A stretch of DNA of 64,000 bases from Macrostomum lignano. Lineage: Eukaryota. Positions 27,058 through 63,998 of the stretch are shown here, one piece after another. Position numbers and translations under genes: made by a program. The first letter of the stretch is position 1; each line of letters begins with the position of its first letter. The stretch is taken from positions 62,001-126,000 of the forward strand of contig NIVC01001465.1 of NCBI GenBank assembly GCA_002269645.1, read 5' to 3'. The notes beneath the pieces are model-generated. The model made no database searches. It saw nothing but the letters and a program-made list of their open reading frames with translations, and had not been told where the DNA came from.

Positions 27058-29226
<2,169 letters not shown>

Positions 29227-31190: not shown

Positions 31191-31529
31191 TTTTATGGCC
31201 GAACGGCTTTTTGCTGAAAACTTTCGATATGGTCTTTCTCTGGATAGAAATATTCAATAAAGTTGATAGTGAAGCGAGCACATCACACTGCCGGATTCTA
31301 GTGTCTTTCAACACTCGTTTTTTCTCTCAGCAGATGGGATGATTCCAAATTTAGAAACAGAATTTCTTGCCCCTCCGCCAATGGGATTTCGTGCAGCCAG
31401 TTCAAAGAGCAGCGGGGAGGGGTTGCTGCTGTGCGAGCATGAGCACCGGCCTGCATCCTCCTCGAAAAAGCGGAGGACAGTAAGCAGAAGGACAGTTTGC
31501 TGTCCTCAGACCGCTGTCTTTCAGTTGCA

Positions 31530-31910: not shown

Positions 31911-33496
31911 TTCATGTCGCCGTCGTCATGCCGCTGTCGGTGTGCAAAAAAACAGATAAAAAAGCCACTTTGAACAATTAGCCTAAAGCGTCATAAAGGA
32001 CAAAGGAAAATTACAGGGCAGCAAAGCCCCTGAGCTCGTCAAAAGAGATCAAAATCAAAATAATACGAAACCTTTTTATTTAGTAAAGCATAAATCTCTG
32101 TCTTTGCTTTTCTCTCCAACGTCAGTACGCATGCTTAGGTGCATCCTTGAACTCTGCTGAAATTACTCTAGGTAGGGCTTCCACAGGCAGGCTGCTTGTA
32201 GAACACTGCTTGTAATAAGTACTCGAAATAATTTAATGGGTTGTAGAGACATATGCGTGAAGGTATTAGCTTTCCCAAAAAATTAAACCGAAGTAACGAA
32301 TGTGATACGACCTAATAGAGTAATCTAGAAAGACTGTTCTACATGTTTTGCTTGGCACACATGGCGAAGTTGTTCGAATATCCTGTGTCTGTCTGGCCGA
32401 CGATCTCACAAGAAAGCCTCCTTTTATACGTTTAAATTATCACCGCGTATCGGAACCTGCTTGAGTGATGCTCATTATTGTAATAAATTGTATTTGCAGT
32501 GCAGAAACGCTTGGCCCTCCACGTAGGGCGGGAGCGCCTATATATATTTGGGCCTTCATTCCTCAGCCATTCATGTGCGGCCACGTGGGCATAACAGGCA
32601 TAAAAGGGGGAGGTAAGCTGGGGGTACAGAGTACAATAAGTGAGCACAGTGCGCGAGCACCTGGCACTGCTAGGCACCCCGTTTAACAACAGCAAGTGAG
32701 TGCAGGGCTGCGGCATGACAAATATATTCAACTGCAGAGATACATTAAAAAATGCTACTGTAAGTAGAGTAACGCAAAAAGTTGCAGCAGAAGTTAAACT
32801 TGAATCATGTTAATGCGTATAACGCAAAAGATGAACCTGTAGAGGTCTCCAAACATAGTAGCCTACTAAAAGTAATAAGATAAAACTATGAATACAAGTT
32901 TAAAAATAACTATGCGTCATACTCTATTTTTTGTAATATCACGCAAACAGCGAGTGACTATGCTATTGTTCGAAAAACCGGTTCTCGACATCTATTTTTA
33001 GAACTTTCAAATAAGGTAAATGTTAACCTGAATGCGACATAATTCTCACCCTTTTCTATTCAAAACCCACCTATCAAATAATAAAATTTCTTTCGTGAAC
33101 TCAAAAAACCGGTTCTGAGCTCAAGGTCGACTCAAGGCCGACAAATGGTGTATAAATACAAACGCAAAATCCGAGCTGAAATCTCAGACTCGGAGCAGCC
33201 TCCAAAGATCTCGGGCTTTGCAAGAGCAGCCAAACGAGGCTATATCTCTGAGGAAGAGATTAAATACCAATTGGTAAGCTTTGAGGCCTCCCTTTTCCTA
33301 AGGGATTGGATAGGATCTGCGGACCGATTCCGATACCCTTAGAGGATTATCGAGTTATTGATTTTGGATTATCCTAGATTAACCGATAGGAGCACACGAC
33401 TCCGATTCCGTTAGTTCTAGAAGAAGACACCCTTTCTGGAGGACCTCGTATTGTTATAGAAGTTGATTTTGTTATTAGGGCGCATCGTTGATATTG

Positions 33497-36400
33497 ATTT
33501 CTGCACTCGAGGAATACATTGAATTCTGCACTCGAGGAATACATTGAATTCTGCACTCGAGGAATACATTGAATTCTGCACTCGAGGAATACATTGAATT
33601 CTGCACTCGAGGAATACATTGAATTCTGCACTCGAGGAATACATTGATTTCTGCACTCGAGGAATACATTGAATTCTGCACTCGAGGAATACATTGATTT
33701 CTGCACTCGAGGAATACATTGAATTCTGCACTCGAGAAATACATTGATTTCTGCACTCGAGGAATACATTGAATTCTGCACTCGAGGAATACATTGAATT
33801 CTGCACTCGAGGAATACATTGATTTCTGCACTCGAGGAATACATTGATTTCTGCACTCGAGAAATACATTGATTTCTGCACTCGAGGAATACATTGAATT
33901 CTGCACTCGAGGAATACATTGATTTCTGCACTCGAGGAATACATTGATTTCTGCACTCGAGAAATACATTGATTTCTGCACTCGAGGAATACATTGAATT
34001 CTGCACTCGAGAAATACATTGATTTCTGCACTCGAAGAATACATTGAATTCTGCACTCGAGGAATACATTGATTTCTGCACTCGATGAATACATTGATTT
34101 CTGCACTCGAAGAATACATTGATTTCTGCACTCGAAGAATACATTGATTTCTGCACTCGAGGAATACATTGAATTCTGCACTCGAAGAATACATTGAATT
34201 CTGCACTCGAGGAATACATTGAATTCTGCACTCGAGGAATACATTGAATTCTGCACTCGAGGAATACATTGAATTCTGCACTCGAGGAATACATTGAATT
34301 CGGCACTCGAGGAATACATTGATTTCTGCACTCGAGGAATACATTGATTTCTGCACTCGAGGAATACATTTATTTCTGCACTCGAGGAATACATTGATTT
34401 CTGCACTCGAGAAATACATTGATTTCTGCACTCGAAGAATACATTGAATTCTGCACTCGAGGAATACATTGATTTCTGCACTCGAGGAATACATTGAATT
34501 CTGCACTCGAGGAATACATTGAATTCTGCACTCGAGGAATACATTGATTTCTGCACTCGAGGAATACATTGATTTCTGCACTCGAGGAATACATTGAATT
34601 CTGCACTCGAGGAATACATTGATTTCTGCACTCGAGGAATACATTGATTTCTGCACTCGAGGAATACATTGATTTCTGCACTCGAGGAATACATTGAATT
34701 CTGCACTCGAGGAATACATTGATTTCTGCACTCGAGGAATACATTGATTTCTGCACTCGAGGAATACATTGATTTCTGCACTCAAGGAATATACATTGAT
34801 TTCTGCACTCGAGGAATACATTGATTTCTGCACTCGAGGAATACATTGAATTCTGCACTTGAGGAACATATTGATTTCTGCACTCGAGGAATACATTGAT
34901 TTCTGCACTCGAGGAATACATTGATTTCTGCACTCGAGGAATACATTGATTTCTGCACTCGAGGAATACATTGATTTCTGCACTCGAGGAATACATTGAA
35001 TTCTGCACTCGAAGAATACATTGATTTCTGCACTCGAGGAATACATTGAATTCTGCACTCGAGGAATAAATGAATTCTGCACTCGAGGAATACATTGAAT
35101 TCTGCACTCGAGGAATACATTGATTTCTGCACTCGAGGAATATATTGATTTCTGCACTCGAGGAATACATTGATTTCTGCACTCGAGGAATACATTGAAT
35201 TCTGCACTCGAGGAATACATTGAATTCTGCACTCGAGGAATACATTGAATTCTGCACTCGAGGAATACATTGATTTCTGCACTCGAGGAATACATTGATT
35301 TCGGCACTCGAGGAATACATTGATTTCGGCACTCGAGGAATACATTGAATTCTGCACTCGAGGAATACATTGAATTCTGCACTCGAGGAATACATTGAAT
35401 TCTGCACTCGAGGAATACATTGATTTCTGCACTCGAGGAATACATTGAATTCTGCACTCGAGGAATACATTGAATTCTGCACTCGAGGAATACATTGATT
35501 TCTGCACTCGAGGAATACATTGATTTCTGCACTCGAGGAATACATTGAATTCTGCACTCGAGGAATACATTGATTTCTGCACTCGAGGAATACATTGAAT
35601 TCTGCACCGAAGGAATACATTGAATTCTGCACTCGAGGAATACATTGATTTCTGCACTCGAGGAATACATTGATTTCTGCACTCGAGGAATACATTGATT
35701 TCGGCACTCGAGGAATACATTGAATTCTGCACTCGAGGAATACATTGAATTCTGCACTCGAGAAATACATTGATTTCTGCACTCGAGAAATACATTGATT
35801 TCTGCACTCGAGGAATACATTGAATTCTGCACTCGAAGGAATACATTGATTTCTGCACTCGAGGAATACATTGATTTCTGCACTCGAGGAATACATTGAA
35901 TTCTGCACTCGAGGAATACATTGAATTCTGCACTCGAGAATACATTGAATTCTGCACTCGAGGAATACATTGAATTCTGCACTCGAGGAATACATTGAAT
36001 TCTGCACTCGAGGAATACATTGATTTCTGCACTCGAGGAATACATTGAATTCTGCACTCGAGGAATACATTGAATTCTGCACTCGAGGAATACATTGATT
36101 TCTGCACTCGAGGAATACATTGATTTCTGCACTCGAGGAATACATTGATTTCTGCACTCGAGGAATACATTGATTTCTGCACTCGAGGAATACATTGAAT
36201 TCTGCACTCGAGAAATACATTGATTTCTGCACTCGAGGAATACATTGATTTCTGCACTCGAGGAATACATTGATTTCTGCACTCGAGGAATACATTGATT
36301 TCTGCACTCGAGGAATACATTGATTTCTGCACTCGAAGAATACATTGAATTCTGCACTCGAGGAATACATTGAATTCTGCACTCGAGGAATACATTGATT

Positions 36401-39400
36401 TCTGCACTCGAGGAATACATTGATTTCTGCACTCGAGAAATACATTGATTTCTGCACTCGAGGAATACATTGAATTCTGCACTCGAGAATACATTGATTT
36501 CTGCACTCGAAGAATACATTGAATTCTGCACTCGAGGAATACATTGATTTCTGCACTCGAGAATACATTGATTTCTGCACTCGAAGAATACATTGATTTC
36601 TGCACTCGAGAATACATTGATTTCTGCACTCGAGGAATACATTGAATTCTGCACTCGAGAATACATTGAATTCTGCACTCGAGGAATACATTGAATTCTG
36701 CACTCGAGGAATACATTGAATTCTGCACTCGAGGAATACATTGAATTCTGCACTCGAGGAATACATTGAATTCTGCACTCGAGGAATACATTGATTTCTG
36801 CACTCGAGGAATACATTGATTTCTGCACTCGAGGAATACATTGATTTCTGCACTCGAGGAATACATTGATTTCTGCACTCGAGAATACATTGATTTCTGC
36901 ACTCGAGAATACATTGAATTCTGCACTCGAGGAATACATTGATTTCTGCACTCGAGGAATACATTGAATTCTGCACTCGAGGAATACATTGATTTCTGCA
37001 CTCGAGGAATACATTGATTTCTGCACTCGAGGAATACATTGATTTCTGCACTCGAGGAATACATTGAATTCTGCACTCGAGGAATACATTGATTTCTGCA
37101 CTCGAGGAATACATTGATTTCTGCACTCGAGGAATACATTGATTTCTGCACTCGAGGAATACATTGAATTCTGCACTCGAGGAATACATTGATTTCTGCA
37201 CTCGAGGAATACATTGATTTCTGCACTCGAGGAATACATTGATTTCTGCACTCGAGGAATACATTGATTCTGCACTCGAGGAATACATTGATTTCTGCAC
37301 TCGAGGAATACATTGAATTCTGCACTCGAGGAATACATTGATTTCTGCACTCGAGGAATACATTGATTTCTGCACTCGAGGAATACATTGATTTCTGCAC
37401 TCGAGGAATACATTGATTTCTGCACTCGAGGAATACATTGATTTCTGCACTCGAGGAATACATTGAATTCTGCACTCGAGGAATACATTGATTTCTGCAC
37501 TCGAGGAATACATTGAATTCTGCACTCGAGGAATACATTGAATTCTGCACTCGAGGAATACATTGAATTCTGCACTCGAGGAATACATTGATTTCTGCAC
37601 TCGAGGAATACATTGATTTCTGCACTCGAGGAATACATTGATTTCTGCACTCGAGGAATACATTGAATTCTGCACTCGAGGAATACATTGAATTCTGCAC
37701 TCGAGGAATACATTGAATTCTGCACTCGAGGAATACATTGATTTCTGCACTCGAGGAATACATTGATTTCGGCACTCGAGGAATACATTGATTCTGCACT
37801 CGAGGAATACATTGAATTCTGCACTCGAGGAATACATTGAATTCTGCACTCGAGGAATACATTGATTCTGCACTCGAGGAATACATTGATTTCTGCACTC
37901 GAGGAATACATTGAATTCTGCACTCGAGGAATACATTGAATTCTGCACTCGAGGAATACATTGATTTCTGCACTCGAGGAATACATTGATTTCTGCACTC
38001 GAGGAATACATTGATTTCTGCACTCGAGGAATACATTGATTTCTGCACTCGAGGAATACATTGAATTCTGCACTCGAGGAATACATTGAATTCTGCACTC
38101 GAGGAATACATTGATTTCTGCACTCGAGGAATACATTGATTTCTGCACTCGAGGAATACATTGATTTCTGCACTCGAGGAATACATTGAATTCTGCACTC
38201 GAGGAATACATTGAATTCTGCACTCGAGAAATACATTGATTTCTGCACTCGAGGAATACATTGATTTCTGCACTCGAGGAATACATTGAATTCTGCACTC
38301 GAGGAATACATTGATTTCTGCACTCGAGGAATACATTGATTTCTGCACTCGAGGAATACATTGAATTCTGCACTCGAGGAATACATTGATTTCTGCACTC
38401 GAGGAATACATTGATTTCTGCACTCGAGGAATACATTGAATTCTGCACTCGAGGAATACATTGATTTCTGCACTCGAGGAATACATTGATTTCTGCACTC
38501 GAGGAATACATTGAATTCTGCACTCGAGGAATACATTGATTTCTGCACTCGAGGAATACATTGATTTCTGCACTCGAGGAATACATTGATTTCTGCACTC
38601 GAGGAATACATTGATTTCTGCACTCGAGGAATACATTGATTTCTGCACTCGAGGAATACATTGATTTCTGCACTCGAGGAATACATTGATTTCTGCACTC
38701 GAGGAATACATTGATTTCTGCACTCGAGGAATACATTGATTTCTGCACTCGAGGAATACATTGATTTCTGCACTCGAGGAATACATTGATTTCTGCACTC
38801 GAGGAATACATTGATTTCTGCACTCGAGGAATACATTGATTTCTGCACTCGAGGAATACATTGATTTCTGCACTCGAGGAATACATTGATTTCTGCACTC
38901 GAGGAATACATTGATTTCTGCACTCGAGGAATACATTGATTTCTGCACTCGAGGAATACATTGATTTCTGCACTCGAGGAATACATTGATTTCTGCACTC
39001 GAGGAATACATTGATTTCTGCACTCGAGGAATACATTGATTTCTGCACTCGAGGAATACATTGATTCTGCACTCGAGGAATACATTGATTTCTGCACTCG
39101 AGGAATACATTGATTTCTGCACTCGAGGAATACATTGATTTCTGCACTCGAGGAATACATTGAATTCTGCACTCGAGGAATACATTGATTTCTGCACTCG
39201 AGGAATACATTGAATTCTGCACTCGAGGAATACATTGAATTCTGCACTCGAGGAATACATTGAATTCTGCACTCGAGGAATACATTGAATTCTGCACTCG
39301 AGGAATACATTGATTTCTGCACTCGAGAAATACATTGATTTCTGCACTCGAGGAATACATTGATTTCTGCACTCGAGGAATACATTGATTTCTGCACTCG

Positions 39401-40882
39401 AGGAATACATTGATTTCTGCACTCGAGGAATACATTGATTCTGCACTCGAGGAATACATTGAATTCTGCACTCGAGGAATACATTGATTTCTGCACTCGA
39501 GGAATACATTGATTTCTGCACTCGAGGAATACATTGATTCTGCACTCGAGGAATACATTGATTTCTGCACTCGAGGAATACATTGATTTCTGCACTCGAG
39601 GAATACATTGAATTCTGCACTCGAGGAATACATTGATTTCTGCACTCGAGGAATACATTGATTTCTGCACTCGAGGAATACATTGATTTCTGCACTCGAG
39701 GAATACATTGATTTCTGCACTCGAGGAATACATTGATTTCTGCACCCGAAGGAATACATTGATTTCTGCACTCGAGGAATACATTGATTTCTGCACTCGA
39801 GGAATACATTGATTTCTGCACCCGAAGGAATACATTGATTTCTGCACTCGAGGAATACATTGAATTTCTGCACTCGAGGAATACATTGATTTCTGCACTC
39901 GAGGAATACATTGATTTCTGCACTCGAGGAATACATTGATTTCTGCACTCGAGGAATACATTGATTTCTGCACTCGAGGAATACATTGAATTCTGCACTC
40001 GAGGAATACATTGATTTCTGCACTCGAGGAATACATTGATTTCTGCACTCGAGGAATACATTGATTTCTGCACTCGAGGAATACATTGATTCTGCACTCG
40101 AGGAATACATTGAATTCTGCACTCGAGGAATACATTGATTTCTGCACTCGAGGAATACATTGATTTCTGCACTCGAGAAATACATTGATTTCTGCACTCG
40201 AGGAATACATTGAATTCTGCACTCGAGGAATACATTGATTTCTGCACTCGAGGAATACATTGATTTCTGCACTCGAGAAATACATTGATTTCTGCACTCG
40301 AGGAATACATTGAATTCTGCACTCGAGAAATACATTGATTTCTGCACTCGAAGAATACATTGAATTCTGCACTCGAGGAATACATTGATTTCTGCACTCG
40401 AGGAATACATTGAATTCTGCACTCGAGGAATACATTGATTTCTGCACTCGAAGAATACATTGATTTCTGCACTCGAGGAATACATTGAATTCTGCACTCG
40501 AAGAATACATTGAATTCTGCACTCGAGGAATACATTGATTTCTGCACTCGAGGAATACATTGAATTCGGCACTCGAGGAATACATTGATTTCTGCACTCG
40601 AGGAATACATTGATTTCTGCACTCGAGGAATACATTGATTTCTGCACTCGAGGAATACATTGATTTCTGCACTCGAGGAATACATTGATTTCTGCACTCG
40701 AAGAATACATTGAATTCTGCACTCGAGGAATACATTGATTTCTGCACTCGAGGAATACATTGATTTCTGCACTCGAGGAATACATTGATTTCTGCACTCG
40801 AGGAATAAATTGATTTCTGCACTCGAGGAATACATTGATTTCTGCACTCGAGGAATACATTGATTTCTGCACTCGAGGAATA
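33497..40882. repeat. 25-bp satellite array (GA(T/A)TTCTGCACTCGAGGAATACATT), about 7.4 kb, roughly 290-300 copies
   Basis: Highly homogeneous array with occasional 1-2-bp indels; the 2000+ aa minus-strand ORFs are artefacts of a stop-free repeat unit. Confidence 0.98.
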
Positions 40883-41354
40883 CTGCGACGTCGATTTTAT
40901 TGTTACCCTCTTGCTTTCGGCTGATTTTAGACTTCAAGAAGATCACCCCGGCAGAAACAGCTCTACGGTGACGAGCTCTGCAGACACGCGCGACAAAGAA
41001 GAGGAGCCCGCAACAGTAAGTGATCACTGATTTTGTTCCCAGGCTTAAGTGTCTGGAAGTGGGAGTCTCGGGTGACTGATCACCTCCCGAAGCAACTCTT
41101 CAAACCAATTAAGTTACCCAGAATATTGTAAAAACGAATCACGAACCCAATGAAGGTAAATGGTGTCCCGAAACCTGTTTCCATTTACTAAAATGTTTTT
41201 GTACTCGTATGTCCATCCATATGCGATTGATTCTATTGAAAGTCTATTCAACTGTTAAGGGGTCAAATTCCTAAGAACTGACCCTTTCACCCCATCAAAA
41301 CGACATTGTTTACGTGAAAATTTCCTTTAAACACAAGCGCTCCAAGAGACGAAA

Positions 41355-42929: not shown

Positions 42930-44400
42930 AAATTGGCAAGGCAATATGTACGAAGAAGTATCAACTGGAAGAATGACGCTGGTGGCCGTTTTGCTTCGGC
43001 TCACATCAACGTAAAGGAGACCCTCACTCCTATCCTCAGCATCCTCGCGGCCCCGGGCCGCTTCGCCAGTGCGGACATAGTCGTGTACAGCGACAGCTCG
43101 GCGGCTGTCGGTGCGCTGAACAAGCTCAGCTCGCCATGTAACGACGTAAACCGGCTCCTGCACAGGCTGTCTCTTGCCTGCGATGCGTGGGGTCTGCGGC
43201 TGCGGGCCTTTTACGTCCCAGGCGCCTTCCAGGTCCTGGCAGACCCGGCCTCTCGCCTTGCTTCAAGAAGTAGGGCGCAGAATTTTTTCTCCGCTTCTAC
43301 CGTAGCCTGCATGATTTGGCTGCTGAATCCTGCTGCATCTCGCGCCACGCGCTCTGCTCTGCCTCCACCTCTCTTTTGCTTTTGCAGGTCTGGCGCCTCC
43401 TGCCTCCCGCCTACCCGGGCCGCTCCTTCGCTTCCTCGCTGACTCCTGGGCTCCTAGTACGAGGGCATCGTACGCTTCAAACCTCGAACAGTGGCAGCGC
43501 TTCTGTGACCTCGAGGGTGTTCAGCCACTAGCGGCGTCCCCGGTGCACCTGGTCGAGTACGTGCGACGCCTGGCTAAGCGCGGCGTGGCATCTGGTAGCC
43601 TCGGTGGACACCTGGCGGCCACCAGCTGGAGCTTCAAGCTGGCGCAACTCCCCGACATCACTAAGTCCGGCCTGATCGATCTGGCAGCTAAGAGTCAAAC
43701 AAACAAGCAGCCATTCAGTCAAGCAGAAAGACCCCATCACCCCAGCGGTTCTGCTTTCACTGGAAAGCCAGGTGAACCCAAGGGAACCTGCAGAGGCCGC
43801 CTTTTGGGCCGCCGTGCTCTGCTGCTTCTGGGCGCTTCTCCGGAAAGCAAACGTCTGCGGGCGCCAATCCATTCTCGTCAGTGACACCCCGGCCGATGGT
43901 CAGTGCTGGAGGCTCCGACTTCGACAGTCGAAGACGAACCAGAGCGGACAAGACTACCAGGAGGCGGTGCTGCCAGTAATCGGAAGCCACCCACTTTTTC
44001 CTGTCCAAGCCCAGCGGCGGCATTTTCAGGCTAACAAGCTGCGGTCTGCGCCGGCGCTCACTCGGCTGTTTTGCGTCCACATCTCCGGAAGCTGGTGCCC
44101 GATGACATCGCGTCAATTCGATCGCCGCCACGCTCGTACTCTGACGGATGCGGATTGGGCGGCGACAGCTTTCTCAAGCCACTCTCTACGACGGGGTGGC
44201 GCCTGTCTGGCGTTCGACAGCGGCCTCGACGTGGAGCAGATCAAACGGCTGGGCGGCTGGCGCAACGGCGCCGTTTCACGTTACCTGCCTGCTGGCGAGC
44301 TTCTCCTCAAGCCTGCGCTGGCTGCGCTGCTGCTCGCTGCGCTTGTCCTCTGCGGCCCGGGGTCAGGGAGGTCAGGGAGGTCAAAGAGGGAGCATAGGAA
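42930..44400 (+). mobile_element. DIRS/Ngaro-type tyrosine-recombinase retrotransposon remnant (RNase H plus YR, RT missing)
   Basis: RNase H: IVVYSDSSAAVGALNK...LRAFYVPGAFQVLADPASR. YR: N-terminal WAPSTRASYASNLEQWQRFC and catalytic LLRKAN, SKTNQ, HSLRRGG, GGWR, SRYL. The YR is split across frames 43440-43884 and 43772-44440. Confidence 0.85.
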
Positions 44401-44604
44401 ACATATTTTTTTTAACCAGGCCAATGGTCGAAAAGGATAGTGGAAAAGGTGCCTAGGGGTCAAGGAAGTCGACGCGACAAAGAGGTTTCAGAGGGGTCAA
44501 GGATGTTTAGCTCGTAAACGTGTAATAGGTCAGAGTTGATCTTTGCCCCAGCCAGTTCATCTCCGCCCACAGTCACTTCATCTCGGCAAAATTGAACTGC
44601 CACT

Positions 44605-47900: not shown

Positions 47901-48575
47901 ACACCCCAATCTAATACCGGACACCCCAATCTAATACCAGACACCCCAATCTAATACCAGACACTCCAACATACCAGACACTCAACCTAATACCGGAAAC
48001 CCCAATCTAATACCCGACACCCCAATCTAATACCGGACACCCCAATCTAATACCGGACACTCCAACATACCAGACACTCAACCTAATACCGGAAACCCCA
48101 ATCTAATACCCGACACCCCAATCTAATACCGGACACCCCAACCTAATACCGGAAACCCCAATCTAATACCGGAAACCACAATCTAATACCGGACACCCCA
48201 ACCTAATACCGGAAACCCCAATCTAATACCGGACACTCCAACATACCGGACACCCCAATTCTTTGAATTGAAACTCAAATACATGCATAACTATAATGGA
48301 CACCCAAATCTAACATTGAACACCCGGTCAAATCGCTGGCTCCACAATGTGATGCCGGAAACCTTGAGTATCTCATGGCGGACACCCTGATATTACAGTT
48401 GTGTTGGACACAGACTGTTCAATTCTCCGTGATATTCTGAAGCCTGCAGCATTTCGTACGCCAACCATGGGGATTCTGATTCACTGCCCAGCACCAGCCC
48501 ATCCCGGACTCACTCTGTAACCTGCGCAATCGCGTCAATCATCGCCAGCCGCTCGGCCACCTGTTGACCATCAGC
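44981..48575 (-). CDS. Multi-exon alpha-helical/coiled-coil protein (partial); exons 48575-48514, 47273-46834, 46287-46014, 45367-44981
   Basis: GC-rich E/R/L/A/Q-rich frames joined by GT-AG junctions with matching phases (2, 0, 1). One extra base near 47150 (AACCGCCGGTGA) breaks the second exon. The resemblance to EVC/EVC2-like proteins is an impression only. Confidence 0.72.
45388..45940. repeat. Intronic mosaic repeat, 14-bp core GTGACAGGGATGGA
   Basis: Starts about 20 bp from the acceptor at 45368. Confidence 0.92.
46340..46700. repeat. Intronic ~21-bp repeat (GTAGCCTGTAACCTATAGTCT)
   Basis: Degenerate tandem units between exons. Confidence 0.88.
47320..48260. repeat. Intronic 20-bp minisatellite (CTAATACCGGACACCCCAAT)
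   Basis: About 45 copies with 17-bp variants. Confidence 0.95.
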
Positions 48576-48904
48576 CTGCAGCAGCCACAGCCGGCCCAGG
48601 ACGCCGTCCTCCCCCGCCTTGCCAGATCCGACTTCCGCCGTCGGGGGAACCAGCGACCTCCGGCTGTTGCGAGCCGCTTCCTGCGAAGCCTCCGATCGGC
48701 TGTTCCGCATGGAGCGCATTCGCAGGGAACTGCCGGATGTTGCCGACGCCCGGCGGAGGCTCTGAATCGGGTGGCGGCACAAACTCTCGATTCCTTAGTC
48801 CAGGGGTGGCCAACTCCGGCCCGCAAAGTCTCTCTATCCGGCAATCGGGTCCTTGGACACTTTAGACTGGCGATCCGGCCCGCTCAAGGATTGTCTCTTC
48901 TTAG

Positions 48905-50960: not shown

Positions 50961-51769
50961 ATCCCCTCTCTTTTCCACTCCTAGCTGACCCGCAGTCAAG
51001 AGCTGGATTGTTTATCTGGTCCTAGAGGTAAAAATTTTGCCGGCCCCTGCCTTAGGCATTTCAAGCCGACTCAAAATTAGCGATTTCTGAGACTGTCAGC
51101 TGAGCCAAAACTGAACAAAATGCTCCACCGTTTTAATCATTTAATAAACTGAATTGTAATCAAATCGGTGCCAAAAAAACACTATTAAAACAAATTCAAA
51201 TCACTGTTGAAATACCTTTGAACGCATTATAAAAGTAGGACTTCTAACATTCTTATTCTTCTCTTATTAAACTATTTTAGGCACTTTAATGTGCTTTAAA
51301 GTATTGTGTGTGGAAGGCTTTCAACAAATTTGGCATTGACCAATCATGCCAATTGGCGAGACTGCACCGTTATGTTATCTTCCGAGTTTGGACGGCTGAT
51401 TTACAATATTCTGCCAGTTTGTATGCTAATAAACAAGATGCTTTTTTCTAAAAGAAATTGTTAACAGCTTGTCGACACACGGATTGCTTAAATTGTAACA
51501 TAATTCAAAACCGTTCAGAAAGCTCAACTGGATTTTTGCGGCTCAGGGTTGTAAGCTGCAGGGGAGGGGCATAATTGCCCCCACAAATATGCTGCTCCAC
51601 AAAAACTAAATGAAAGGGGCAACAAAAGTTAACGAATGACAGGAGCTCAATTTTTGCTACCTCTTGGATGTGGCATCCACCGACCTACATGTAGGAGACA
51701 CGGTATGGGCACAATTAGGGCGCGCCTACCAAGAGACTAGAGCGACCACAAAAAAGACGGGCGCCCGCT

Positions 51770-52370
51770 AAAATACAGGGGGCGCCCACTAAGATACAGG
51801 GGGCGCCCACTAAGATACAGGGGGGCGCCCACTAAGATACAGGGGGGGCGCCCACTAAGATACAGGGGGGCGCCCACTAAGATACAGGGGGGCGCCCACT
51901 AAGATACAGGGGGCGCCCACTAAGATACAGGGGGCGCCCACTAAGATACAGGGGGGCGCCCACTAAGATACAGGGGGCGCCCACTAAGATACAGGGGGCG
52001 CGAGAGACAGGGGCGCCCTCCGAGAGACAGGGGCGCCCTCCCAGAAACATGGGGCGCCCTCCCAGAAACATGGGGCGCTCTCCAAGAGACAGGGGCCCTC
52101 TCTCCAAGAGACAGGGGCGCTCTCCAAGAGACATGGGGCGCTCTCCAAGAGATAGGGGCGCCCTCCCAGAAACATGGGGCGCCCTCCAAGAGACAGGGGC
52201 GCTCTCCAAGAGACATGGGGCGCTCTCTCCAAGAGACAGGGGCGCCCTCCCAGAAACATGGGGCACCCTCCAAGAGACAGGGGCGCTCTCTCCAAGAGAC
52301 AGGGGCGCCCTCTCAGAAACATGGGGCGCCCTCTCAGAAACATGGGGCGCCCTCCAAAGGACAGGAGCGC
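51770..52370. repeat. Two adjacent related 21-23-bp repeats (GGGGGCGCCCACTAAGATACA; GGGGCGCCCTCCCAGAAACAT)
   Basis: Tandem units upstream of the PCBD exons. Confidence 0.92.
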
Positions 52371-52419
52371 TCTGCAAGAGACGGCGTATTGGTGCGTATT
52401 TGGCGTAGTGGTGTTGCAG

Positions 52420-52757
52420 TGCAACTGGAAACTGGTTGATGGCCGGGATGCCATCTCCAAGAGTTACAAGTTCAAGGATTTTCAGCAGGTATGGGGACTC
52501 TTTCTAGCTGAATATAATTCTGGATGAGATTTGACTTGCTAAAATCAGTTGATATTTTCTCCCAATTGCAGGCATTTTCCTTCATGACCCACTCGGCTCT
52601 AAATGCTGAGAAGCTTGACCACCACCCCGAGTGGTTCAACGTCTACAACCGAGTTGACGTCACCCTGACCACGCACTCCTGCGGGGGCATATCCAGTCGA
52701 GACGTCCGCTTGGCCAGTGTAATGGACGCGGCTGCGGCCAAGTATTTTGCTCAGTAA
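52420..52757 (+). CDS. PCBD: Pterin-4-alpha-carbinolamine dehydratase (PCBD/DCoH), last two exons 52420-52488 and 52572-52757; first exon not located
   Basis: [21 protein letters not shown]|[39 protein letters not shown]; canonical phase-0 GT-AG intron. Confidence 0.95.
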
Positions 52758-53139
52758 AATTGTAATATTAAATGATTTCGCATTGCACACTACTTGCTTC
52801 GACAAATTCAGTAGCGTGATTCGCGTTTTTATTTTTTCTAATAAAAATTTAACAATAAAAATAATACTATATCACGTTTTTGTACCATCAGCATGCTAAA
52901 ATTGGATTTATGATGAATAAAATCTAGAAAAAGTAAAAATGGTGCGTCTTTGGACAAACAAGTATCTCGGAAAGTTAAATTGCTGTCTAATTTTCTATAC
53001 AGATAGCAATTTAAGACATTTTGAATAAAAAATAAATACATGTGCAGCTGGGTAAAATTTAGAAACTTTGCAGAGTCGCAAATACAAAATAAACACGCTT
53101 ATGCCGTATATTCCGGTAGAATATATACTCATGTTGATC

Positions 53140-54270
53140 TCAGATCTCATGCTGATCCCAGATCCCATATCCCAAATCCCATGCTGATCCCAGATCCCGG
53201 ATCCCATGCTGATCCCATATACCATGCTGATCCCAGATCCTATATCTCATGCTGATCCTATCCCATACAGATCCCAGATTCCATGCTGATCCCAGATTCC
53301 CTGCTGATCCCAAATCCCATGCTGATCCCAGATCGTGGATCTCATGCTGATCCTATCCCATACAGATCCCAGATTCCATGCTGATCCCAGATTCCCTGCT
53401 GATCCCAAATCCCATGCTGATCCCAGATCGTGGATCTCATGCTGATCCTATCCCATACAGATCCCAGATTCCATGCTGATCCCAGATTCCCTGCTGATCC
53501 CAGATTCCCTGCTGATCCCAGATTCCCTGCTGATTCCATATTCCATGCTGATCTCAGATCCTAGATCTCATGCTGATCACAAATCCCATGCTGATCACAA
53601 ATCCCATGCTGATCACAAATCCCATGCTGATCACAAATCCCATGCTGATCACAAATCCCATGCTGATCACAAATCCCATGCTGATCACAAATCCCATGCT
53701 GATCACAAATCCCATGCTGATCACAAATCCCATGCTGATCACAAATCCCATGCTGATCACAAATCCCATGCTGATCACAAATCCCATGCTGATCACAAAT
53801 CCCATGCTGATCACAAATCCCATGCTGATCACAAATCCCATGCTGATCACAAATCCCATGCTGATCACAAATCCCATGCTGATCACAAATCCCATGCTGA
53901 TCACAAATCCCATGCTGATCACAAATCCCATGCTGATCACAAATCCCATGCTGATCACAAATCCCATGCTGATCACAAATCCCATGCTGATCACAAATCC
54001 CATGCTGATCACAAATCCCATGCTGATCACAAATCCCATGCTGATCACAAATCCCATGCTGATCCCAGATCCCAGATTTCATGCTGATCCTATCCCATGC
54101 AGATCCCAGGTCCCATTCTGATCCCAGATCCCATGCTGACGCCAAATCCCAGATACCATGCTAATCCCAGATCCCATTATGATCCCAGATCCATGCTGAT
54201 GCCAAATCTCAGATCCCAGATCTCGTGCTGATCCCAGATCCCAGATCTCATGCTGATCCCAGATCCCATG
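53140..54270. repeat. GATCCCA-family repeat with a homogeneous 18-bp core (CATGCTGATCACAAATCC, 53570-54062)
   Basis: Perfect central array flanked by diverged units. Confidence 0.96.
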
Positions 54271-54281
54271 GTGATCCCCAG

Positions 54282-56321
54282 TCAATACTTAATTCGACCT
54301 CCGTTGTTGTCCACGACCATTTGGCATCGCCTCGGCATGCTCCCCACCAGTCTCGCCGCCACGCCTTCCTCGCCCATTCGCCGCCACTCCTCTTTGATGA
54401 TTTGTTTGAGCCTTGCCGAATCCTCACCGGCGCGGTCGCCCCGCCCCAGTAGTAGTTCGTGCCGCCTTTGCCGCACTCGGCTTTTGAGCAGCGCCCAAGC
54501 GTTTTCAATCGGGTTCAGGTCGGGCGACCGGGCCGGCCAGTCTTGGACGGTCGCGAGTTCGAGCCGCCGCTTGGCCTCGGCGACCAGCACCGTCCGATGG
54601 TGCGGCGCGTTGTCGTCCATGAGCTGGCAGCTTTCGGGCAGGTGGCGCCGGCAGTAGGGCGCGGCCACCGCCTCCAGCAGGCGGGCGTAAGCCGGGCCGG
54701 TCAGGCTGTCCGGGAAGACGGCCTCGCTCTGGCCGGTCAAGTGGATGCCAGCCCAGAGCCACACCGAGGGGAACTGGCGCCACTGCGGCTGCTCCTGCTG
54801 TACGCCCGGAGCTTGTGACCTGCTTCTGAAATGTGGCAGCATACAAGTTTGGCCCTCGCAAATCGACCGTCGGTCAGCATGCAGTTGGGTTGGGGGGCAA
54901 GGGGGCCGCGGCCCCCTCCCCCTGATCATTTGGCAAAAACATATGCACCCCCTCGCGGTAGCTTTGGCGCCCCCTAGAAGTAGCTTTGGCGCCCCCTAGA
55001 AGTAGATTTGGCACCCCCTTGCGGTAGCTTTGGTGCCCCCTTGGAGGAAGTAGCTTTGGCGCCCCTTGCAGTAGCTTTGGCGCTCCCCAAAATATAATGG
55101 CGATCCCCAATAAAAAATCGTGGCTACACTCCTGACGCTGAACCCTGAGCACACACTCTTGAGACTTCACAGCGACCTGAATTTCTCATTCTCAGTAATG
55201 AGCAAACTTATTAACTTTCAGATGTAGTTAGGCGGCTGTATCCAGATTTCTATGGCTAAACTGAACGCACAAGCCATCAATGTCACTTTGCTTACCTTGT
55301 GAGGCGTTGCTCACCTGGCTGCCCATGGCCCGACGCCTCTGCCTCCGGATTCCTGCGCTCTTCCGTCACTCTCGAAGATTTTTTCCTGCTCAGATTTTTT
55401 ATTCGCCATTGACGACCTCGGCAGGTAAAGTCGGTCAGCTTGAAGCAGGTCTCGTCCGTGAACAGAACTCTGCAATGCAATCAGAGCTGACCAGCTCAGA
55501 GTCTCACCTGTGCTCAGTGCAATCAGAGCTGACCAGCTCAGAGTCTCACCTGGCCCAGTGCAATCAGAGCTGACCAGCTCAGAGTCTCACCTGTGCTCAG
55601 TGCAATCAGAGCTGACCAGCTCAGAGTCTCACCTGTGCTCAGTGCAATCAGAGCTGACCAGCTCAAAGTCTCACCTGGCCCAGTGCAATCAGAGCTGACC
55701 AGCTCAGAGTCTCACCTGTGCCCCGTGCAATCAGAGCTGACCAGCTCAGAGTCTCACCTGTGCCCAGTGCAATCAGAGCTGACCAGCTCAAAGTCTCACC
55801 TGGCCCAGTGCAATCAGAGCTGACCAGCTCAGAGTCTCACCTGGCCCAGTACAATCAGAGCTGACCAGCTCAAAGTCTCACCTAGCCCAGTGCTCCGGTC
55901 TCCAGTGCAGCCGTAGCCGAGCCCACTTCAGACGCGCCGCGCACCAGGCCCTGAACTTGGCGCTTCCGGCAGGCGCGGAGTTGCCCCGATCCGCCCGACT
56001 GCGGAAGCCCGCCGAGATGAGCCGCCGCCTGACGGTGTGCCTGGACGCCGGCACGGACCAGGCTCGAGCCAGAGACTCGCAGGACAGGTGCGGGTGCGCT
56101 GCGGCCAGGCTGCACAGCTCTGAGTCCTGCCGAGGTCCGCTGATCCGGCTGAGTCTCCTGGGCTGGTTGGCTACGGTGCCCAGCAGGCGGTGCTTGGCGG
56201 CATTGTAGTGCGCGGCGCCGAGGGAGATGCCCAGCCGGCTGGCGATCTGCCTGTAGGAGGCGCCGGCCATGCGCATGCCAACCAGTTGCTGACGCTGCTC
56301 AGTGCTGAGCTGTGGCGGCAT
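54282..56321 (-). CDS. Tc1/IS630-superfamily DD35E transposase-like gene, three exons (56321-55882, 55469-55296, 54825-54282), 385 aa when spliced
   Basis: HTH (SYRQIASRLGIS), second HTH (SRHTVRRRL), RLKWAR, VLFTDET, VWLWAGI, MDDNAPHH, WPARSPDLNPIEN and SMPRRC...NGGRIKY. Both introns are GT-AG phase 2, and the exon lengths 440+174+544 give an uninterrupted ORF. Confidence 0.9.
55472..55881. repeat. 41-43-bp tandem repeat that makes up essentially all of transposase intron 1, about 10 copies
   Basis: Minus-strand unit GTGAGACTCTGAGCTGGTCAGCTCTGATTGCACTGGGCCAG. Confidence 0.95.
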
Positions 56322-57667
56322 TTGGCACCGGCGGATTTTGTAGAGGGGTGGAGGCTGGTATAAGGCTAGCAATATTTTATGCAGCTTAGCGCAGACTGGG
56401 TAATTTATATTCATAATTAACTGCCCCCCGCTGCTCCGCAATGCAGCTGTTATTGTCCGGGGCTACGTGTAGCCCCCCCCCCGCATAGAGTCAGCCAAGA
56501 ATACAGCCGTCTGTGCTGGGCTGCAAGTATTTTTGCGCCATCTGGGTGGGGGTCCATTGTTCCTCAGATCAGTGCTTACTGCAATATGCGCTCAGGCTAA
56601 AAGCGTTTTTGCAAGCGAACTCAGTCAGTAACTTCTATTTATCGAACATGTACATATAGTATCTCATTTGGCGAAAACGCGATCAAAATCGGTGAAGAAT
56701 TGCAGTCTCTAGAGCGTTATGGACAAACATACAAATATTAGAGATTTAGTATATTTAGATTATTTACGGTATTCACATACTGCTATAAAGAAGCCCAACT
56801 AACTAACAAAATTACTAAGGAGACCGTGGGAGAAAGTGTTTGGAACAACGAATAATTATTTTGTGGTGGCTAAACTTGTACTTGTATTAAAGAAGTTAAA
56901 CCCTAGCCCAGCTGTGCCTGTATAGTTCGTGACGCTGATCCAGGTTTATACATTTTTCAGATATTTATTGACAGCGTATTTGGTGAGATATGAATTAAGG
57001 CTATTTATGTGCATGTAGGAGTATGAGTACTATACATGCAGCTTATGTAGTACATGCATGTATAATCACCAAAGATGCTAATTTACCAAATGGTGACATA
57101 ATAATAAAAGGAATATTTTTTCTTCACAACAGCAGTAAATAATTACTCAAATTTTAAGCATCTCGATCTTTGCCAATTGATCCATGTCATCGACTGCACT
57201 CTGTTGTAGTACAGAAGGACTCTTGGCAACTCCGGAATCACGGGAAAAATTGAAAGCAGATTTTTTCACGATGCGGATCTACCTGCCACTCTGCTCCTCA
57301 TTTTCCTCACTGCTTCTACTAAACAGTGGTTCTCTTGTTCGTTAGGAAAATGCGTATAAATTATCAAAAATTTATTTTATTACAATTCGGCTTTGATTTT
57401 AAGCACATTTATTTAGTTTCGAAAACAGTTTTCTTTAAATTTTCAATATTACAAGCAAATATAGATTATCATATTAAAATGCTATAAATATTTTAAATCA
57501 CTAATTAAGAAGCGACTTATGCAGCTTGTTTGTTATAAATATTGCTGGCATTGTAAACAGTTGCTAGAAATCGCAGTTTTGAACAAACAAGTTCGGACCG
57601 ATTTATTTTAATCTCTTTACCAATACAGTTTGCTCCAAGGAGGCTTTCCTTTACAGCTTCTGGAAAA

Positions 57668-58960: not shown

Positions 58961-58974
58961 GTAAGACGGCCGTT

Positions 58975-59232
58975 GGAGCTGGCATAGGGGGGTGGGAGTG
59001 AGGTTGGTGCTGGCATAGGGTTGGGAGTGAGGTTGGTGCTGGCATAGGGGGTTGGGAGTGAGGTTGGTGCTGGCATAGGGGGTTGGGAGTGAGGCTGGTG
59101 CTGGCATAGGGGGTGGGAGTGAGGTTGGTGCTGGCATAGGGGGTTGGGAGTGAGGTTGGTGCTGGCATAGGGTTGGGAGAGAGGTTGGTTCTGGCATAGG
59201 GGGTTGGGAGTGAGGTTGGTGCTGGCATAGGG
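58975..59232. repeat. ~30-bp intronic repeat (GGCATAGGGGGTTGGGAGTGAGGTTGGTGCT)
   Basis: About 8-9 copies between the exon donor and the LINE tail. Confidence 0.92.

Positions 59233-59323: not shown

Positions 59324-63998
<4,675 letters not shown>

What the first reader, a model, noticed from the sequence alone, without database searches (positions are those of the whole stretch)
54282..56321. Intact, two-intron Tc1-like DD35E transposase gene with no visible terminal inverted repeats
Seen in the sequence: three exons splice with canonical phase-2 GT-AG junctions into a 385-aa ORF that keeps both HTH regions and the full triad (FTDE, MDDNA, and PIE with 35 residues between D and E). It also has a roughly 30-aa charged insertion after the first catalytic D, spanning exon 2 and exon 3. 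The introns have filled with repeats while the ORF stayed open, and I could not find TIR/TA ends in the flanks. Known: Tc1 itself and some Tc1-like families carry introns, and transposases are sometimes domesticated. Inference: this is either a host-domesticated transposase under purifying selection or an unusual intron-bearing DD35E lineage.
Basis: partly seen in the sequence, partly recalled or inferred. Interest (0 to 1): 0.72.

Follow-up and report, generated by a model that had tools for sequence, protein, structure and literature searches.

The report
Stationary intron-bearing Tc1-derived transposase gene
A flatworm (Macrostomum lignano) gene derived from a Tc1-type jumping-gene enzyme has lost its mobile ends, gained two introns and stayed at one chromosomal spot with its protein kept intact by selection, so it is probably being used by the host; similar cases are already known in bivalves and flies.

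Summary
On the minus strand, three exons (56321-55882, 55469-55296, 54825-54282) join through GT-AG, phase-2 junctions into a 385-aa Tc1-like protein. It has two HTH regions and the triad D152/D276/E312, with 35 residues between D2 and E. A 34-aa disordered insertion follows D1. No TIRs occur within ±8 kb.

The window is Macrostomum lignano. By fetching the neighbouring PCBD gene from the Mlig_3_7 assembly I recovered seven related loci. Four "type-1" loci carry the gene at the same place: one is identical to the window, one is a second intact 385-aa copy, one has a 25-nt duplication, and one is 5'-truncated. Three older paralogous loci hold only a decayed exon-3 remnant. Every copy found is syntenic.

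Among the four type-1 copies, 43 coding sites vary, 24 synonymous and 19 nonsynonymous (omega 0.26-0.37, P≤0.001). No change hits a conserved column. Intron lengths vary (intron 1 122-574 nt; intron 2 470-4130 nt), largely through minisatellite copy number.

Best reading (confidence about 0.6): a stationary Tc1-derived gene under purifying selection, a candidate domesticated transposase. "DD35E" is a private one-residue insertion in a DD34E-clade protein, not the Traveler family. The closest precedent is TLEWI in bivalves. Expression and conservation in other species are untested.

The parts
55882..56321 (-). Exon 1 (ATG at 56321; codons 1-146 plus 2 nt). It encodes both HTH sub-domains and the linker.
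   Evidence: AF2 helices 7-47 and 63-103. Identical in L009; 4-5 substitutions in L005, L007 and L008.
55470..55881 (-). Intron 1, 412 nt. It looks like an ancestral intron of about 38 nt, enlarged by tandem copies of a 41/42-nt unit that spans the exon 1/intron 1 junction. It holds ten AG|GTGAGAC donor motifs, nine of them decoys. The acceptor TTGCAG is unique.
   Evidence: The same intron is 122 nt (3 units) in L005, 574 nt in L007 and 417 nt in L008.
55296..55469 (-). Exon 2. It holds catalytic D152/E153 (FTDE) and the first half of the 34-aa insertion.
   Evidence: The M. lignano ML2 gene models use the same boundaries.
54826..55295 (-). Intron 2, 470 nt, with a 22-bp minisatellite at 54958-55088.
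   Evidence: It is 761 nt in L007, 2125 nt in L005 (array expanded to about 1.7 kb) and 4130 nt in L008 (with a TE-related insertion).
54282..54825 (-). Exon 3. It holds the second half of the insertion, D276 (54614-54612), the extra residue D300, E312 (54506-54504), a 9-aa insertion after E, and the canonical C-terminus ...SMPRR...GGRIKY, with the stop at 54284-54282.
53130..54278 (.). 18-bp satellite (about 60 units) that abuts the stop codon and takes the place of any 3' UTR or TIR of the ancestral element. It is also present at the paralogous type-2 loci.
   Evidence: window 53130-54075 matches L006 13232-14159 at 82%.
56322..56630 (-). 5' flank of 309 nt shared with the other haplotypes or duplicates. 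At 56630/56631 the window haplotype diverges: at least 7.4 kb of AT-rich DNA plus a LINE. L005 and L007 continue instead to a boule-like RRM gene about 2.2 kb upstream on the same strand; L008 carries the same upstream gene but has lost this flank.
52420..52760 (+). Last two exons of the host gene PCBD (pterin-4a-carbinolamine dehydratase), convergent with the transposase gene. It served as the synteny anchor for all related loci.
   Evidence: Pterin_4a 1.1e-19; 100% to BOX15_Mlig009500g2.

Best explanation
This is a stationary, TIR-less gene in Macrostomum lignano derived from a Tc1-clade (DD34E-type) transposase. It has the architecture of a host gene: three exons, two spliceosomal introns and GC-rich exons. 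It sits at a fixed position between a boule-like RRM gene (or, in this haplotype, an inserted LINE) and PCBD.

Shown here:
- The spliced ORF is intact, and the predicted fold is a complete Tc1/mariner transposase, with a bipartite HTH DNA-binding domain and an RNase-H-like DDE domain.
- All recoverable copies are syntenic.
- Protein-changing substitutions among the copies are under-represented (omega about 0.3).
- An older paralogous copy has decayed while this lineage stayed open.

Inferred:
- The gene is maintained by host-level selection, that is, it is domesticated or in the course of domestication.
- Its product is a nuclear, sequence-specific DNA-binding protein that may still cut DNA.
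- It cannot move its own locus, because no ends remain.
- The 34-46-residue disordered, charged insertion in what I take from memory to be the clamp-loop region, the missing glycine-rich strip and the missing GRPR motif suggest that canonical paired-end complex formation is altered.
For: 1. Identity and integrity. The AF2 model has pLDDT 84.9, and Foldseek matches Mos1 and Sleeping Beauty at about 1e-11. The protein keeps all 13 invariant columns and 25 of 26 near-invariant columns of a 70-sequence alignment.

2. No mobility features. No TIR was found within ±8 kb. A satellite starts 4 nt after the stop codon.

3. Synteny. Four type-1 loci from GCA_002269645.1 (L009, identical to the window; L007; L005; L008) all carry the gene about 1.5 kb downstream of PCBD, tail to tail. 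The three ML2 UniProt models (A0A1I8FF32, A0A1I8GLN2, A0A1I8ILK9) map to these same loci. No non-syntenic copy turned up in 1.84 billion representative proteins.

4. Purifying selection. L007 holds a second intact 385-aa ORF. Among the four copies 43 sites vary, 24 synonymous and 19 nonsynonymous; omega is 0.26-0.37 for kappa 1-10, with P from 1.7e-5 to 9e-4. None of the 19 nonsynonymous changes hits any of 38 conserved columns. Against the window, pN is 0.9% (L007) and 1.8% (L008), while non-coding divergence is about 2.7% and 3.8% (my sums from the table) and pS is 4.5% and 5.4%.

5. Age. The type-2 PCBD paralogues have PCBD pS 0.30. They keep only an exon-3 remnant with a W220 stop, deletions of 116 and 109 nt (one removes D276), small indels, and P302T and S305W. 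Exons 1-2 are gone, and its substitutions look neutral (6 synonymous, 16 nonsynonymous).

6. Host-like composition. GC3 is 0.78, within the 0.69-0.88 of host genes in the window.
Against: - Two of the four type-1 copies are damaged. L005 has a 25-nt tandem duplication that shifts the frame of the last 24 residues. L008 has lost the first 110 nt of the CDS and its upstream region.
- There is no expression evidence. The Mlig_3_7 annotation calls no gene here, although that annotation excluded transcripts overlapping repeats (PMC5730564).
- No poly(A) signal lies between the stop codon and 1.15 kb of satellite.
- No orthologue from another species is available. The next relative is only 41% identical.
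- All the selection evidence comes from paralogues or haplotypes within one assembly, which is only about 64% error-free by REAPR.
- Part of the variation lies in a 170-nt tract that may come from gene conversion with an unseen copy.
- The genome itself could not be searched at the DNA level, so dispersed copies cannot be excluded.
Confidence: 0.6

Rival explanations
1. It is an immobilised relic with no present function. On this view a Tc1-like element lost its ends long ago, and the intact ORF and the synonymous bias reflect past constraint plus chance. The gene is now drifting to pseudogene status in a redundant, hidden-polyploid genome.
For: Two of the four type-1 copies already carry disabling lesions. 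The type-2 copies are dead. The L008 lineage, which is truncated, has a higher ratio (my tally from the table: about 11 nonsynonymous to 10 synonymous). No gene is annotated here in Mlig_3_7. There is no nearby poly(A) signal.
Against: Omega is 0.26-0.37 with P≤0.001, and no conserved column is hit. Two independent intact 385-aa ORFs (window/L009 and L007) persist. Over the same period the type-2 copy collected at least 7 ORF-breaking lesions in 544 nt of exon 3. At that rate about 15 would be expected in 1158 nt, so an intact ORF by chance has a probability of roughly 1e-6 (my estimate).
Confidence: 0.22
2. It is an ordinary member of a still-mobile, intron-bearing Tc1-like transposon family. 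Its ends are merely hidden or destroyed at this copy, for example by the satellite at the 3' end and the insertion 309 bp upstream.
For: Intron-bearing Tc1-like transposase genes exist (TLEWI, bioRxiv 10.1101/656579; Tc1, Tc3 and Minos from memory). The closest relative, P0122/L001, is a canonical intronless element with 38-nt inverted repeats at both contig ends. The conversion-like tract in L005 and L007 hints at a further diverged copy somewhere. DNA transposons make up 3% of the genome.
Against: All seven recovered loci are syntenic with PCBD. The introns, the 18-bp satellite and the 22-bp array are shared even with the old type-2 paralogues, so the copies arose by duplication of the region, not by transposition. 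L005 and L007 share their upstream sequence well beyond the window breakpoint, and still no inverted repeat appears. Only three M. lignano protein models match, and all come from this locus family.
Confidence: 0.12
3. The splicing is fortuitous. On this view the "introns" are minisatellite or foreign insertions in a dead intronless ORF that merely happen to be bounded by GT and AG.
For: Both introns hold tandem arrays (intron 1 almost wholly, intron 2 in part), and 22 in-frame GT-AG combinations exist around intron 2.
Against: Removing intron 1 restores the conserved W..V(L/I)FTDE block without gain or loss of a residue. Splice sites and exon boundaries are identical in L005, L007 and L009, and apart from the deleted 5' end of exon 1 also in L008, while intron lengths change several-fold. 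The last array unit runs into a unique TTGCAG acceptor, so the intron predates the array. Host introns nearby (HDAC-like, PCBD) carry the same kind of array. Independent ML2 gene models use the same junctions.
Confidence: 0.05

Closest known systems
TLEWI (Tc1-Like Elements With Introns) of pteriomorph bivalves (Puzakov et al., bioRxiv 10.1101/656579)
   Same: Low copy number, no TIRs or TSDs, and 2-5 spliceosomal GT-AG introns in the transposase ORF. The GRPR-like motif is absent and the G-rich box is depleted of glycine. The full DDE triad is kept. Some copies are intact and others carry duplications or frameshifts. Domestication has been proposed for them.
   Different: TLEWI is DD36E with a YQDNDSKH motif and a D1-D2 spacing of 81-89 aa. 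This gene is DD35E with MDDNAPHH and a D1-D2 spacing of 123 aa, because of the 34-aa insertion. The host phylum is different (Platyhelminthes). Its nearest relatives are DD34E elements, so it is probably an independent case. A direct phylogeny with TLEWI was not made.
Canonical DD34E/Tc1 elements, represented by the closest relative P0122 on Logan contig L001 and by the Sleeping Beauty catalytic domain (PDB 5cr4)
   Same: The same domain order and fold, and the same motifs: (V/I)LFTDE, DDNAP.H, WP(A/S)RSPDLNPIE and SMPRR...GG..(K/R)Y. The catalytic half is 41% identical to P0122, including LMWAGIHLTG.
   Different: L001 has no introns, is 1.45 kb long, has 38-nt inverted repeats at both contig ends, carries a GGGGS strip, has a spacing of 34 and is AT-rich. 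The window gene has two introns, no TIRs, a spacing of 35, no G strip, no GRPR motif, and insertions of 34 aa and 9 aa.
Drosophila CG14478, a domesticated Tc1/mariner catalytic-domain gene (PMC13548663)
   Same: No TIRs or TSDs, low copy number, the DDE fold retained, purifying selection, and a one-residue insertion between D2 and E relative to ancestral transposases.
   Different: [quoted passage not shown] This gene keeps both the DNA-binding and catalytic modules. That paper says such a combination has not been observed among domesticated Tc1/mariner genes. Here the only evidence comes from paralogues within one species, with omega about 0.3.
Traveler (DD35E/TR) family (PMC7093834)
   Same: 35 residues between the second D and the E, and derivation from DD34E/Tc1.
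   Different: Traveler elements are TIR-bearing, about 1.5 kb, encode a 338-aa transposase, occur only in vertebrates, and are more than 80% identical between species. The window protein is about 26-31% identical to the salmonid Tc1-like proteins among its hits, and its 107 best homologues are all DD34E.

Membership tests
Tc1/mariner (IS630-Tc1-mariner) superfamily transposase | N-terminal bipartite (PAI/RED) helix-turn-helix DNA-binding domain | tested here: met
   HTH_Tnp_Tc3_2 at residues 67-138, E 2.6e-6 (below the gathering cut-off), and weak HTH_38/HTH_23 hits at residues 4-34. AF2 gives two three-helix bundles, residues 7-47 and 63-103, with pLDDT above 90.
Tc1/mariner (IS630-Tc1-mariner) superfamily transposase | RNase-H-like catalytic domain with a DDE/D triad | tested here: met
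   DDE_3 scores 7.9e-12. D152, D276 and E312 sit in invariant alignment columns. Foldseek matches Mos1 (3hot) and Sleeping Beauty (5cr4) at about 1e-11.
Tc1/mariner (IS630-Tc1-mariner) superfamily transposon (mobile element) | Terminal inverted repeats flanking the transposase gene | tested here: not met
   No inverted repeat above chance was found in ±2.5 kb, by local alignment of the flanks, or in ±8-10 kb.
Tc1/mariner (IS630-Tc1-mariner) superfamily transposon (mobile element) | TA target-site duplication at the element ends | not testable with these tools
   The ends cannot be defined. The 3' side is replaced by a satellite 4 nt after the stop codon, and no empty site exists among the seven related loci.
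DD34E/Tc1 family | 34 residues between the second D and the E | tested here: not met
   35 residues, because of the extra D300 in VQDWPARSPD. All 107 aligned homologues have 34, and so does Sleeping Beauty.
DD34E/Tc1 family | Closest sequence relatives are DD34E elements | tested here: met
   The best non-Macrostomum hits P0122, P0126 and P0127 (38-41% identity) and 107 of 107 further homologues are DD34E. No formal tree with named reference families was built.
DD35E/Traveler family | Membership of the monophyletic Traveler clade (more than 80% identity between species, vertebrate hosts, TIRs, 338-aa transposase) | tested here: not met
   The spacing of 35 is shared. But identity to the salmonid Tc1-like hits is only 26-31%, and no DD35E protein is among the 107 best homologues. 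The family description comes from PMC7093834. No Traveler reference sequence was aligned directly.
Domesticated (host-co-opted) transposase gene | Loss of TIRs and TSDs | tested here: met
Domesticated (host-co-opted) transposase gene | Low copy number at a fixed, syntenic position | tested here: met
   Four type-1 loci and three type-2 loci all lie beside PCBD. All three UniProt models come from these loci. Limitation: the genome was not searched at the DNA level.
Domesticated (host-co-opted) transposase gene | Purifying selection on the coding sequence | tested here: met
   24 synonymous and 19 nonsynonymous changes among the four syntenic copies; omega 0.26-0.37; P≤0.001. These are within-species paralogues or haplotypes only.
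Domesticated (host-co-opted) transposase gene | Orthologues conserved in other species | not testable with these tools
   No other Macrostomum sequence appeared in either protein search. The next relative is 41% identical and comes from an unidentified Logan sample.
Domesticated (host-co-opted) transposase gene | Expression as a spliced mRNA | not tested
   No RNA data are reachable with these tools. The ML2 gene models use the same junctions, but how they were built is unknown to me.
TLEWI-like intron-bearing Tc1-like genes | Spliceosomal introns in the ORF, no TIRs, low copy number, degenerate GRPR motif and G-box | tested here: met
   Two GT-AG introns; no TIRs. No G[RK]x[RK] motif lies between the HTHs, although 74 of 107 homologues have one. 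There is no glycine strip, although 88 of 107 have one.
TLEWI-like intron-bearing Tc1-like genes | DD36E signature, YQDNDSKH motif and common descent with the bivalve clade | tested here: not met
   The spacing is 35 and the motif is MDDNAPHH. A phylogeny with TLEWI sequences was not made.

The most novel reading that the evidence does not exclude
A flatworm host gene encodes a Tc1-derived protein that keeps both the DNA-binding module and a catalytically competent DDE module. PMC13548663 states that this combination has not been observed among domesticated Tc1/mariner genes. In this reading the protein acts as a programmed endonuclease or recombinase on host DNA. A germline role is imaginable, because the ancestral arrangement puts the gene about 2.2 kb downstream of, and on the same strand as, a boule-like RRM gene. 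So is a role in the turnover of the minisatellite arrays that fill this genome. The enlarged, disordered clamp-loop insertion would then serve as a new interaction surface.
Probability: 0.12. Interest if true: 0.8.

Novelty: new member of a known kind. Interest (0 to 1): 0.5.

Why it matters
Domesticated Tc1/mariner genes are few. The known ones keep either the DNA-binding module or the catalytic module, not both.

If this gene is truly maintained by the host, it would be a case in Platyhelminthes with both modules and the full triad intact. It would also be an independent parallel to the bivalve TLEWI genes. The shared features are introns, loss of TIRs, loss of the GRPR motif and erosion of the G-box, which points to a repeatable path from transposon to gene.

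M. lignano has RNAi and transgenesis, so function could be tested directly.

The locus also shows concretely how exons are held constant while introns change length several-fold, largely through minisatellite expansion. One of these arrays is made of duplicated exon/intron junctions carrying decoy splice donors.

Tried and rejected
1. TIR search. I ran the inverted-repeat finder on ±2.5 kb, a Smith-Waterman alignment of the 5' flank against the reverse complement of the DNA beyond the satellite and of the satellite itself, and the finder again on 46-64 kb. Nothing rose above shuffled controls.

2. P0001 (A0A1I8FF32) as a second, independent, frame-shifted copy. Rejected. Its downstream "exons" map at 100% to window 48516-48664, and it also uses the antisense strand of the PCBD last exon. 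It is therefore this same locus in the error-rich ML2 assembly.

3. Alternative splice patterns that would remove the 34-aa insertion.

4. Intron 1 created by tandem duplication of an exonic AGGT segment. Rejected. The acceptor TTGCAG is unique, and the spliced junction (TAG|AGT) has no AGGT. The array is a later expansion of an existing short intron.

5. Other Tc1-like remnants in the window. None was found.

6. Exact-sequence look-ups of the exon-1 and exon-3 ORFs and of P0001. Nothing is on record.

7. A second homologue search with the C-terminal half alone. It found no further M. lignano model.

8. Wasik et al. 2015, the ML2 paper. It is not held in the library.

9. tRNA and Rfam scans of the window. 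Both were empty.

10. Membership of Traveler (DD35E). Rejected.
Full report
**Observation**

The gene lies on the minus strand. From the ATG at 56321, exon 1 runs to 55882 and ends ...GGGCTAG|GTGAGA. Exon 2 (55469-55296) follows ...TTGCAG| and ends ...ACAAG|GTAAGC. Exon 3 (54825-54282) follows ...CATTTCAG|. Both junctions are phase 2, and the spliced ORF is 385 codons. Around intron 2 there are 22 GT-AG pairs that keep the frame open.

The product matches Pfam DDE_3 at 7.9e-12 and, below the gathering score, HTH_Tnp_Tc3_2. An AlphaFold2 model built on a 70-sequence alignment has mean pLDDT 84.9 and pTM 0.73. Only residues 176-221 fall below pLDDT 50. Its best structural matches are the Mos1 and Sleeping Beauty transposases, with SETMAR among the weaker matches.

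In an alignment with 107 homologues the catalytic residues are D152, D276 and E312. All 107 homologues have 34 residues between D2 and E; this protein has 35, because of one extra residue (D300). D1-D2 is 123 residues instead of about 90, which is a 34-aa insertion straddling the exon 2/3 junction. The alignment with PDB 5cr4 shows the same extra residue. The protein lacks the glycine strip found in 88 of 107 homologues and the GRPR-like motif found in 74 of 107.

Intron 1 is almost wholly a 42-bp array, and intron 2 holds a 22-bp array. An 18-bp satellite begins 4 nt after the stop codon. No terminal inverted repeat was found by three approaches out to ±8 kb.

**Organism and the apparent second copy**

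The only close protein hit in the first search was a Macrostomum lignano UniProt model, P0001 (A0A1I8FF32). It matches in blocks of 100% identity broken by frame shifts. It is not an independent copy. Its further exons map at 100% to window 48516-48664, and it also uses the antisense strand of a neighbouring gene's last exon. That model comes from the PacBio ML2 assembly, which is redundant and rich in errors (PMC5730564). The window is therefore M. lignano.

An exhaustive HMMER search found two more ML2 models, P0121 (A0A1I8GLN2) and P0123 (A0A1I8ILK9). The next relative is only 41% identical. It is P0122, an intronless DD34E element on a 1.45-kb Logan contig with 38-nt inverted repeats at both ends.

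**Comparative loci**

The gene downstream of the transposase, on the other strand, is PCBD (Pterin_4a). Searching with its protein returned two M. lignano clusters from the Mlig_3_7 assembly. Fetching their contigs gave seven loci.

Four "type-1" loci carry the transposase gene in the same place and orientation:
- L009 is identical to the window.
- L007 has 21 substitutions and a second fully open 385-aa ORF.
- L005 has an L007-like coding sequence, window-like flanks, and a 25-nt tandem duplication that shifts the frame of the last 24 codons.
- L008 has lost the first 110 nt of the CDS and about 420 nt upstream, but is open thereafter. It is the source of model P0121.

Splice sites are the same wherever the exons are present. 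Intron 1 is 122, 412, 417 or 574 nt, and intron 2 is 470, 761, 2125 or 4130 nt. Much of this variation comes from array copy number; the 4130-nt intron in L008 also contains a TE-related insertion.

Three "type-2" loci (L006, L010, L011) belong to an older duplicate of the region. PCBD there has pS 0.30 and pN 0.02 against the window, and alignable non-coding DNA is about 80% identical. These loci still have the 18-bp satellite and the 22-bp array. Of the gene they keep only an exon-3 remnant, which carries a stop at W220, deletions of 116 and 109 nt (one removes D276), several small indels, and changes at residues that are invariant or nearly so (P302T, S305W). Its substitutions look neutral, 6 synonymous and 16 nonsynonymous.

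**Selection**

Among the four type-1 copies 43 coding sites vary: 33 transitions and 10 transversions, 24 synonymous and 19 nonsynonymous. Expected nonsynonymous fractions of 0.75 to 0.68 (kappa 1 to 10) give omega of 0.26 to 0.37 and one-sided binomial P of 1.7e-5 to 9e-4. None of the 19 nonsynonymous changes falls on any of the 38 invariant or near-invariant alignment columns. Pairwise pN/pS is 0.19-0.34.

Against the window, non-coding divergence sums to about 2.7% for L007 and 3.8% for L008 (my sums from the table). For the same pairs pN is 0.9% and 1.8%, and pS is 4.5% and 5.4%.

These copies are syntenic, so the differences arose in place. They cannot be credited to selection among transposing lineages.

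A rough, inferred calculation adds to this. The type-2 copy acquired at least 7 ORF-breaking lesions in 544 nt of exon 3. At that rate about 15 would be expected in 1158 nt, so two lineages with none would be very unlikely without selection.

**Anatomy of the introns**

Read on the coding strand, intron 1 consists of units GTGAGACTCTGAGCTGGTCAGCTCTGATTGCA + CTGGGC(C/AC)AG. The tail of each unit copies the last bases of exon 1 (..CACTGGGCTAG), and the final unit runs into a unique TTGCAG acceptor. So a short ancestral intron of about 38 nt was enlarged by tandem duplication of the exon/intron junction. The lengths 122 nt and 412 nt fit three and ten units. Every unit carries a decoy AG|GTGAGAC donor, and using any donor but the first would bring a TGA into frame.

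Nearby host introns (HDAC-like gene, PCBD) hold comparable arrays. About 43% of the window is tandem arrays. The repeat filling is therefore a habit of this genome, not a peculiarity of this gene.

**Context**

In L005 and L007 a boule-like RRM gene lies about 2.2 kb upstream on the same strand; L008 has the same upstream gene. The window haplotype (L009) diverges from L005 and L007 309 bp upstream of the ATG, at 56630/56631. From there it carries at least 7.4 kb of AT-rich DNA and a LINE. GC3 of the gene is 0.78, like host genes in the window.

**Interpretation**

The evidence best fits a stationary Tc1-derived gene under purifying selection, that is, a candidate domesticated transposase (confidence about 0.6).

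What it does is inferred only. It should bind DNA through a paired-like domain, and it may still cleave DNA. It cannot mobilise itself. The disordered insertion lies in what I take, from memory of the Mos1 and Sleeping Beauty structures, to be the clamp-loop region. That insertion, together with the loss of the G strip and the GRPR motif, suggests altered synapsis.

Rival explanations:
- A functionless relic (0.22). This is favoured by the two damaged copies and by the lack of expression evidence.
- A still-mobile family with hidden ends (0.12). This is disfavoured by strict synteny.
- Fortuitous splicing (0.05). This is disfavoured by precise restoration of the conserved block and by splice sites that stay constant across copies.

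**Comparison with what is known**

The nearest precedent is TLEWI in bivalves. These are low-copy, TIR-less, intron-bearing Tc1-like genes without GRPR and with a glycine-poor G-box, but they are DD36E and in a different clade. Drosophila CG14478 shares the loss of TIRs, the purifying selection and a one-residue insertion between D2 and E. Traveler shares only the number 35.

I therefore rate this as a new member of a known kind. It is the first such case I could find for flatworms in the held literature, and it is notable for keeping both the DNA-binding and catalytic modules.

**Limits**

The genome could not be searched at the DNA level. No RNA data and no congeners were reachable. The selection test rests on paralogues or haplotypes from one assembly of moderate accuracy.

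Noticed in passing
window 1-64000: About 43% of the window (27,387 nt) is tandem minisatellite arrays of many unrelated units (9-84 bp), plus a 2.2-kb (AGTT)n microsatellite at 27060-29226 and a 7.4-kb array of a 25-bp unit at 33493-40883. Arrays also sit inside host introns: HDAC-like gene at 11256-11738, and PCBD at 51759-52382.
   Followed up: partly
window 55470-55893; L005 14667-14788; L007 and L008 intron 1: The intron-1 array is built from duplicated exon 1/intron 1 junctions, so each unit carries a decoy 5' splice site. Intron 1 is 122, 412, 417 or 574 nt in the four copies; 122 and 412 nt correspond to 3 and 10 units. Using any donor but the first would bring a TGA into frame.
   Followed up: yes
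L005 (NIVC01001405.1), CDS positions 876-1044: L005 has window-like flanks (99.5-100% identity) but an L007-like coding sequence. This includes a 170-nt tract with 12 lineage-specific changes, 8 of them synonymous. It could be a recombinant haplotype, gene conversion from an unseen fourth copy, or an assembly chimera.
   Followed up: partly
L006 14159-14464, L010, L011 compared with window 54334-54857 and PCBD 52420-52750: The dead exon-3 remnant at the older paralogous loci differs from the window by only 8-9% (pS 0.09), although the adjacent PCBD exons have pS 0.30. Either gene conversion occurred later between the paralogous regions, or both copies were under constraint for a long time first.
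   Followed up: partly
window 56630/56631; L005 15537/15538: There is a haplotype breakpoint 309 bp upstream of the ATG. The window and L009 carry at least 7.4 kb of AT-rich DNA plus a LINE. L005 and L007 continue to a boule-like RRM gene on the same strand; L008 has the same gene upstream. The ML2 model A0A1I8GLN2 fuses that RRM gene with the transposase.
   Followed up: partly
window 59327-63998 (-): An apparently intact non-LTR retrotransposon. ORF2 is 1139 aa with endonuclease, reverse transcriptase and RNase H domains (Pfam E 2e-21, 2e-30 and 4.5e-13). An upstream ORF1-like frame lies at 63144-63998. A 31-bp array at 58972-59232 sits just 3' of ORF2.
   Followed up: partly
window 43327-44437 (+): Overlapping ORFs give weak matches to Phage_int_SAM_1 and Phage_integrase, below the gathering scores. 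This could be a Crypton- or DIRS-like tyrosine-recombinase element.
   Followed up: no
window 10429-12294 (-) and 30009-31253 (-): Host-like genes. Two exons of a histone-deacetylase-domain gene score Pfam E 3e-35 and 6e-40. A 415-aa ORF matches CAP59_mtransfer weakly.
   Followed up: no
window 18079-18687, 19797-20439, 21740-22440: Three copies of a repeat of about 0.4-0.6 kb, one of them inverted, with identical long ORFs in several frames. Its nature is unknown.
   Followed up: no
window 54958-55088 and 51759-52382: The 22-bp repeat in transposase intron 2 and the 21-bp repeat in the PCBD intron share a GGCGCCC core. They may be related minisatellite families.
   Followed up: no
window 52826-54281 (-): No canonical poly(A) signal lies between the transposase stop codon and the end of the 1.15-kb satellite. 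The first AATAAA on the minus strand is near 52.83 kb, in the PCBD 3' UTR region, so a transcript would need a 3' UTR of about 1.45 kb made mostly of satellite.
   Followed up: no
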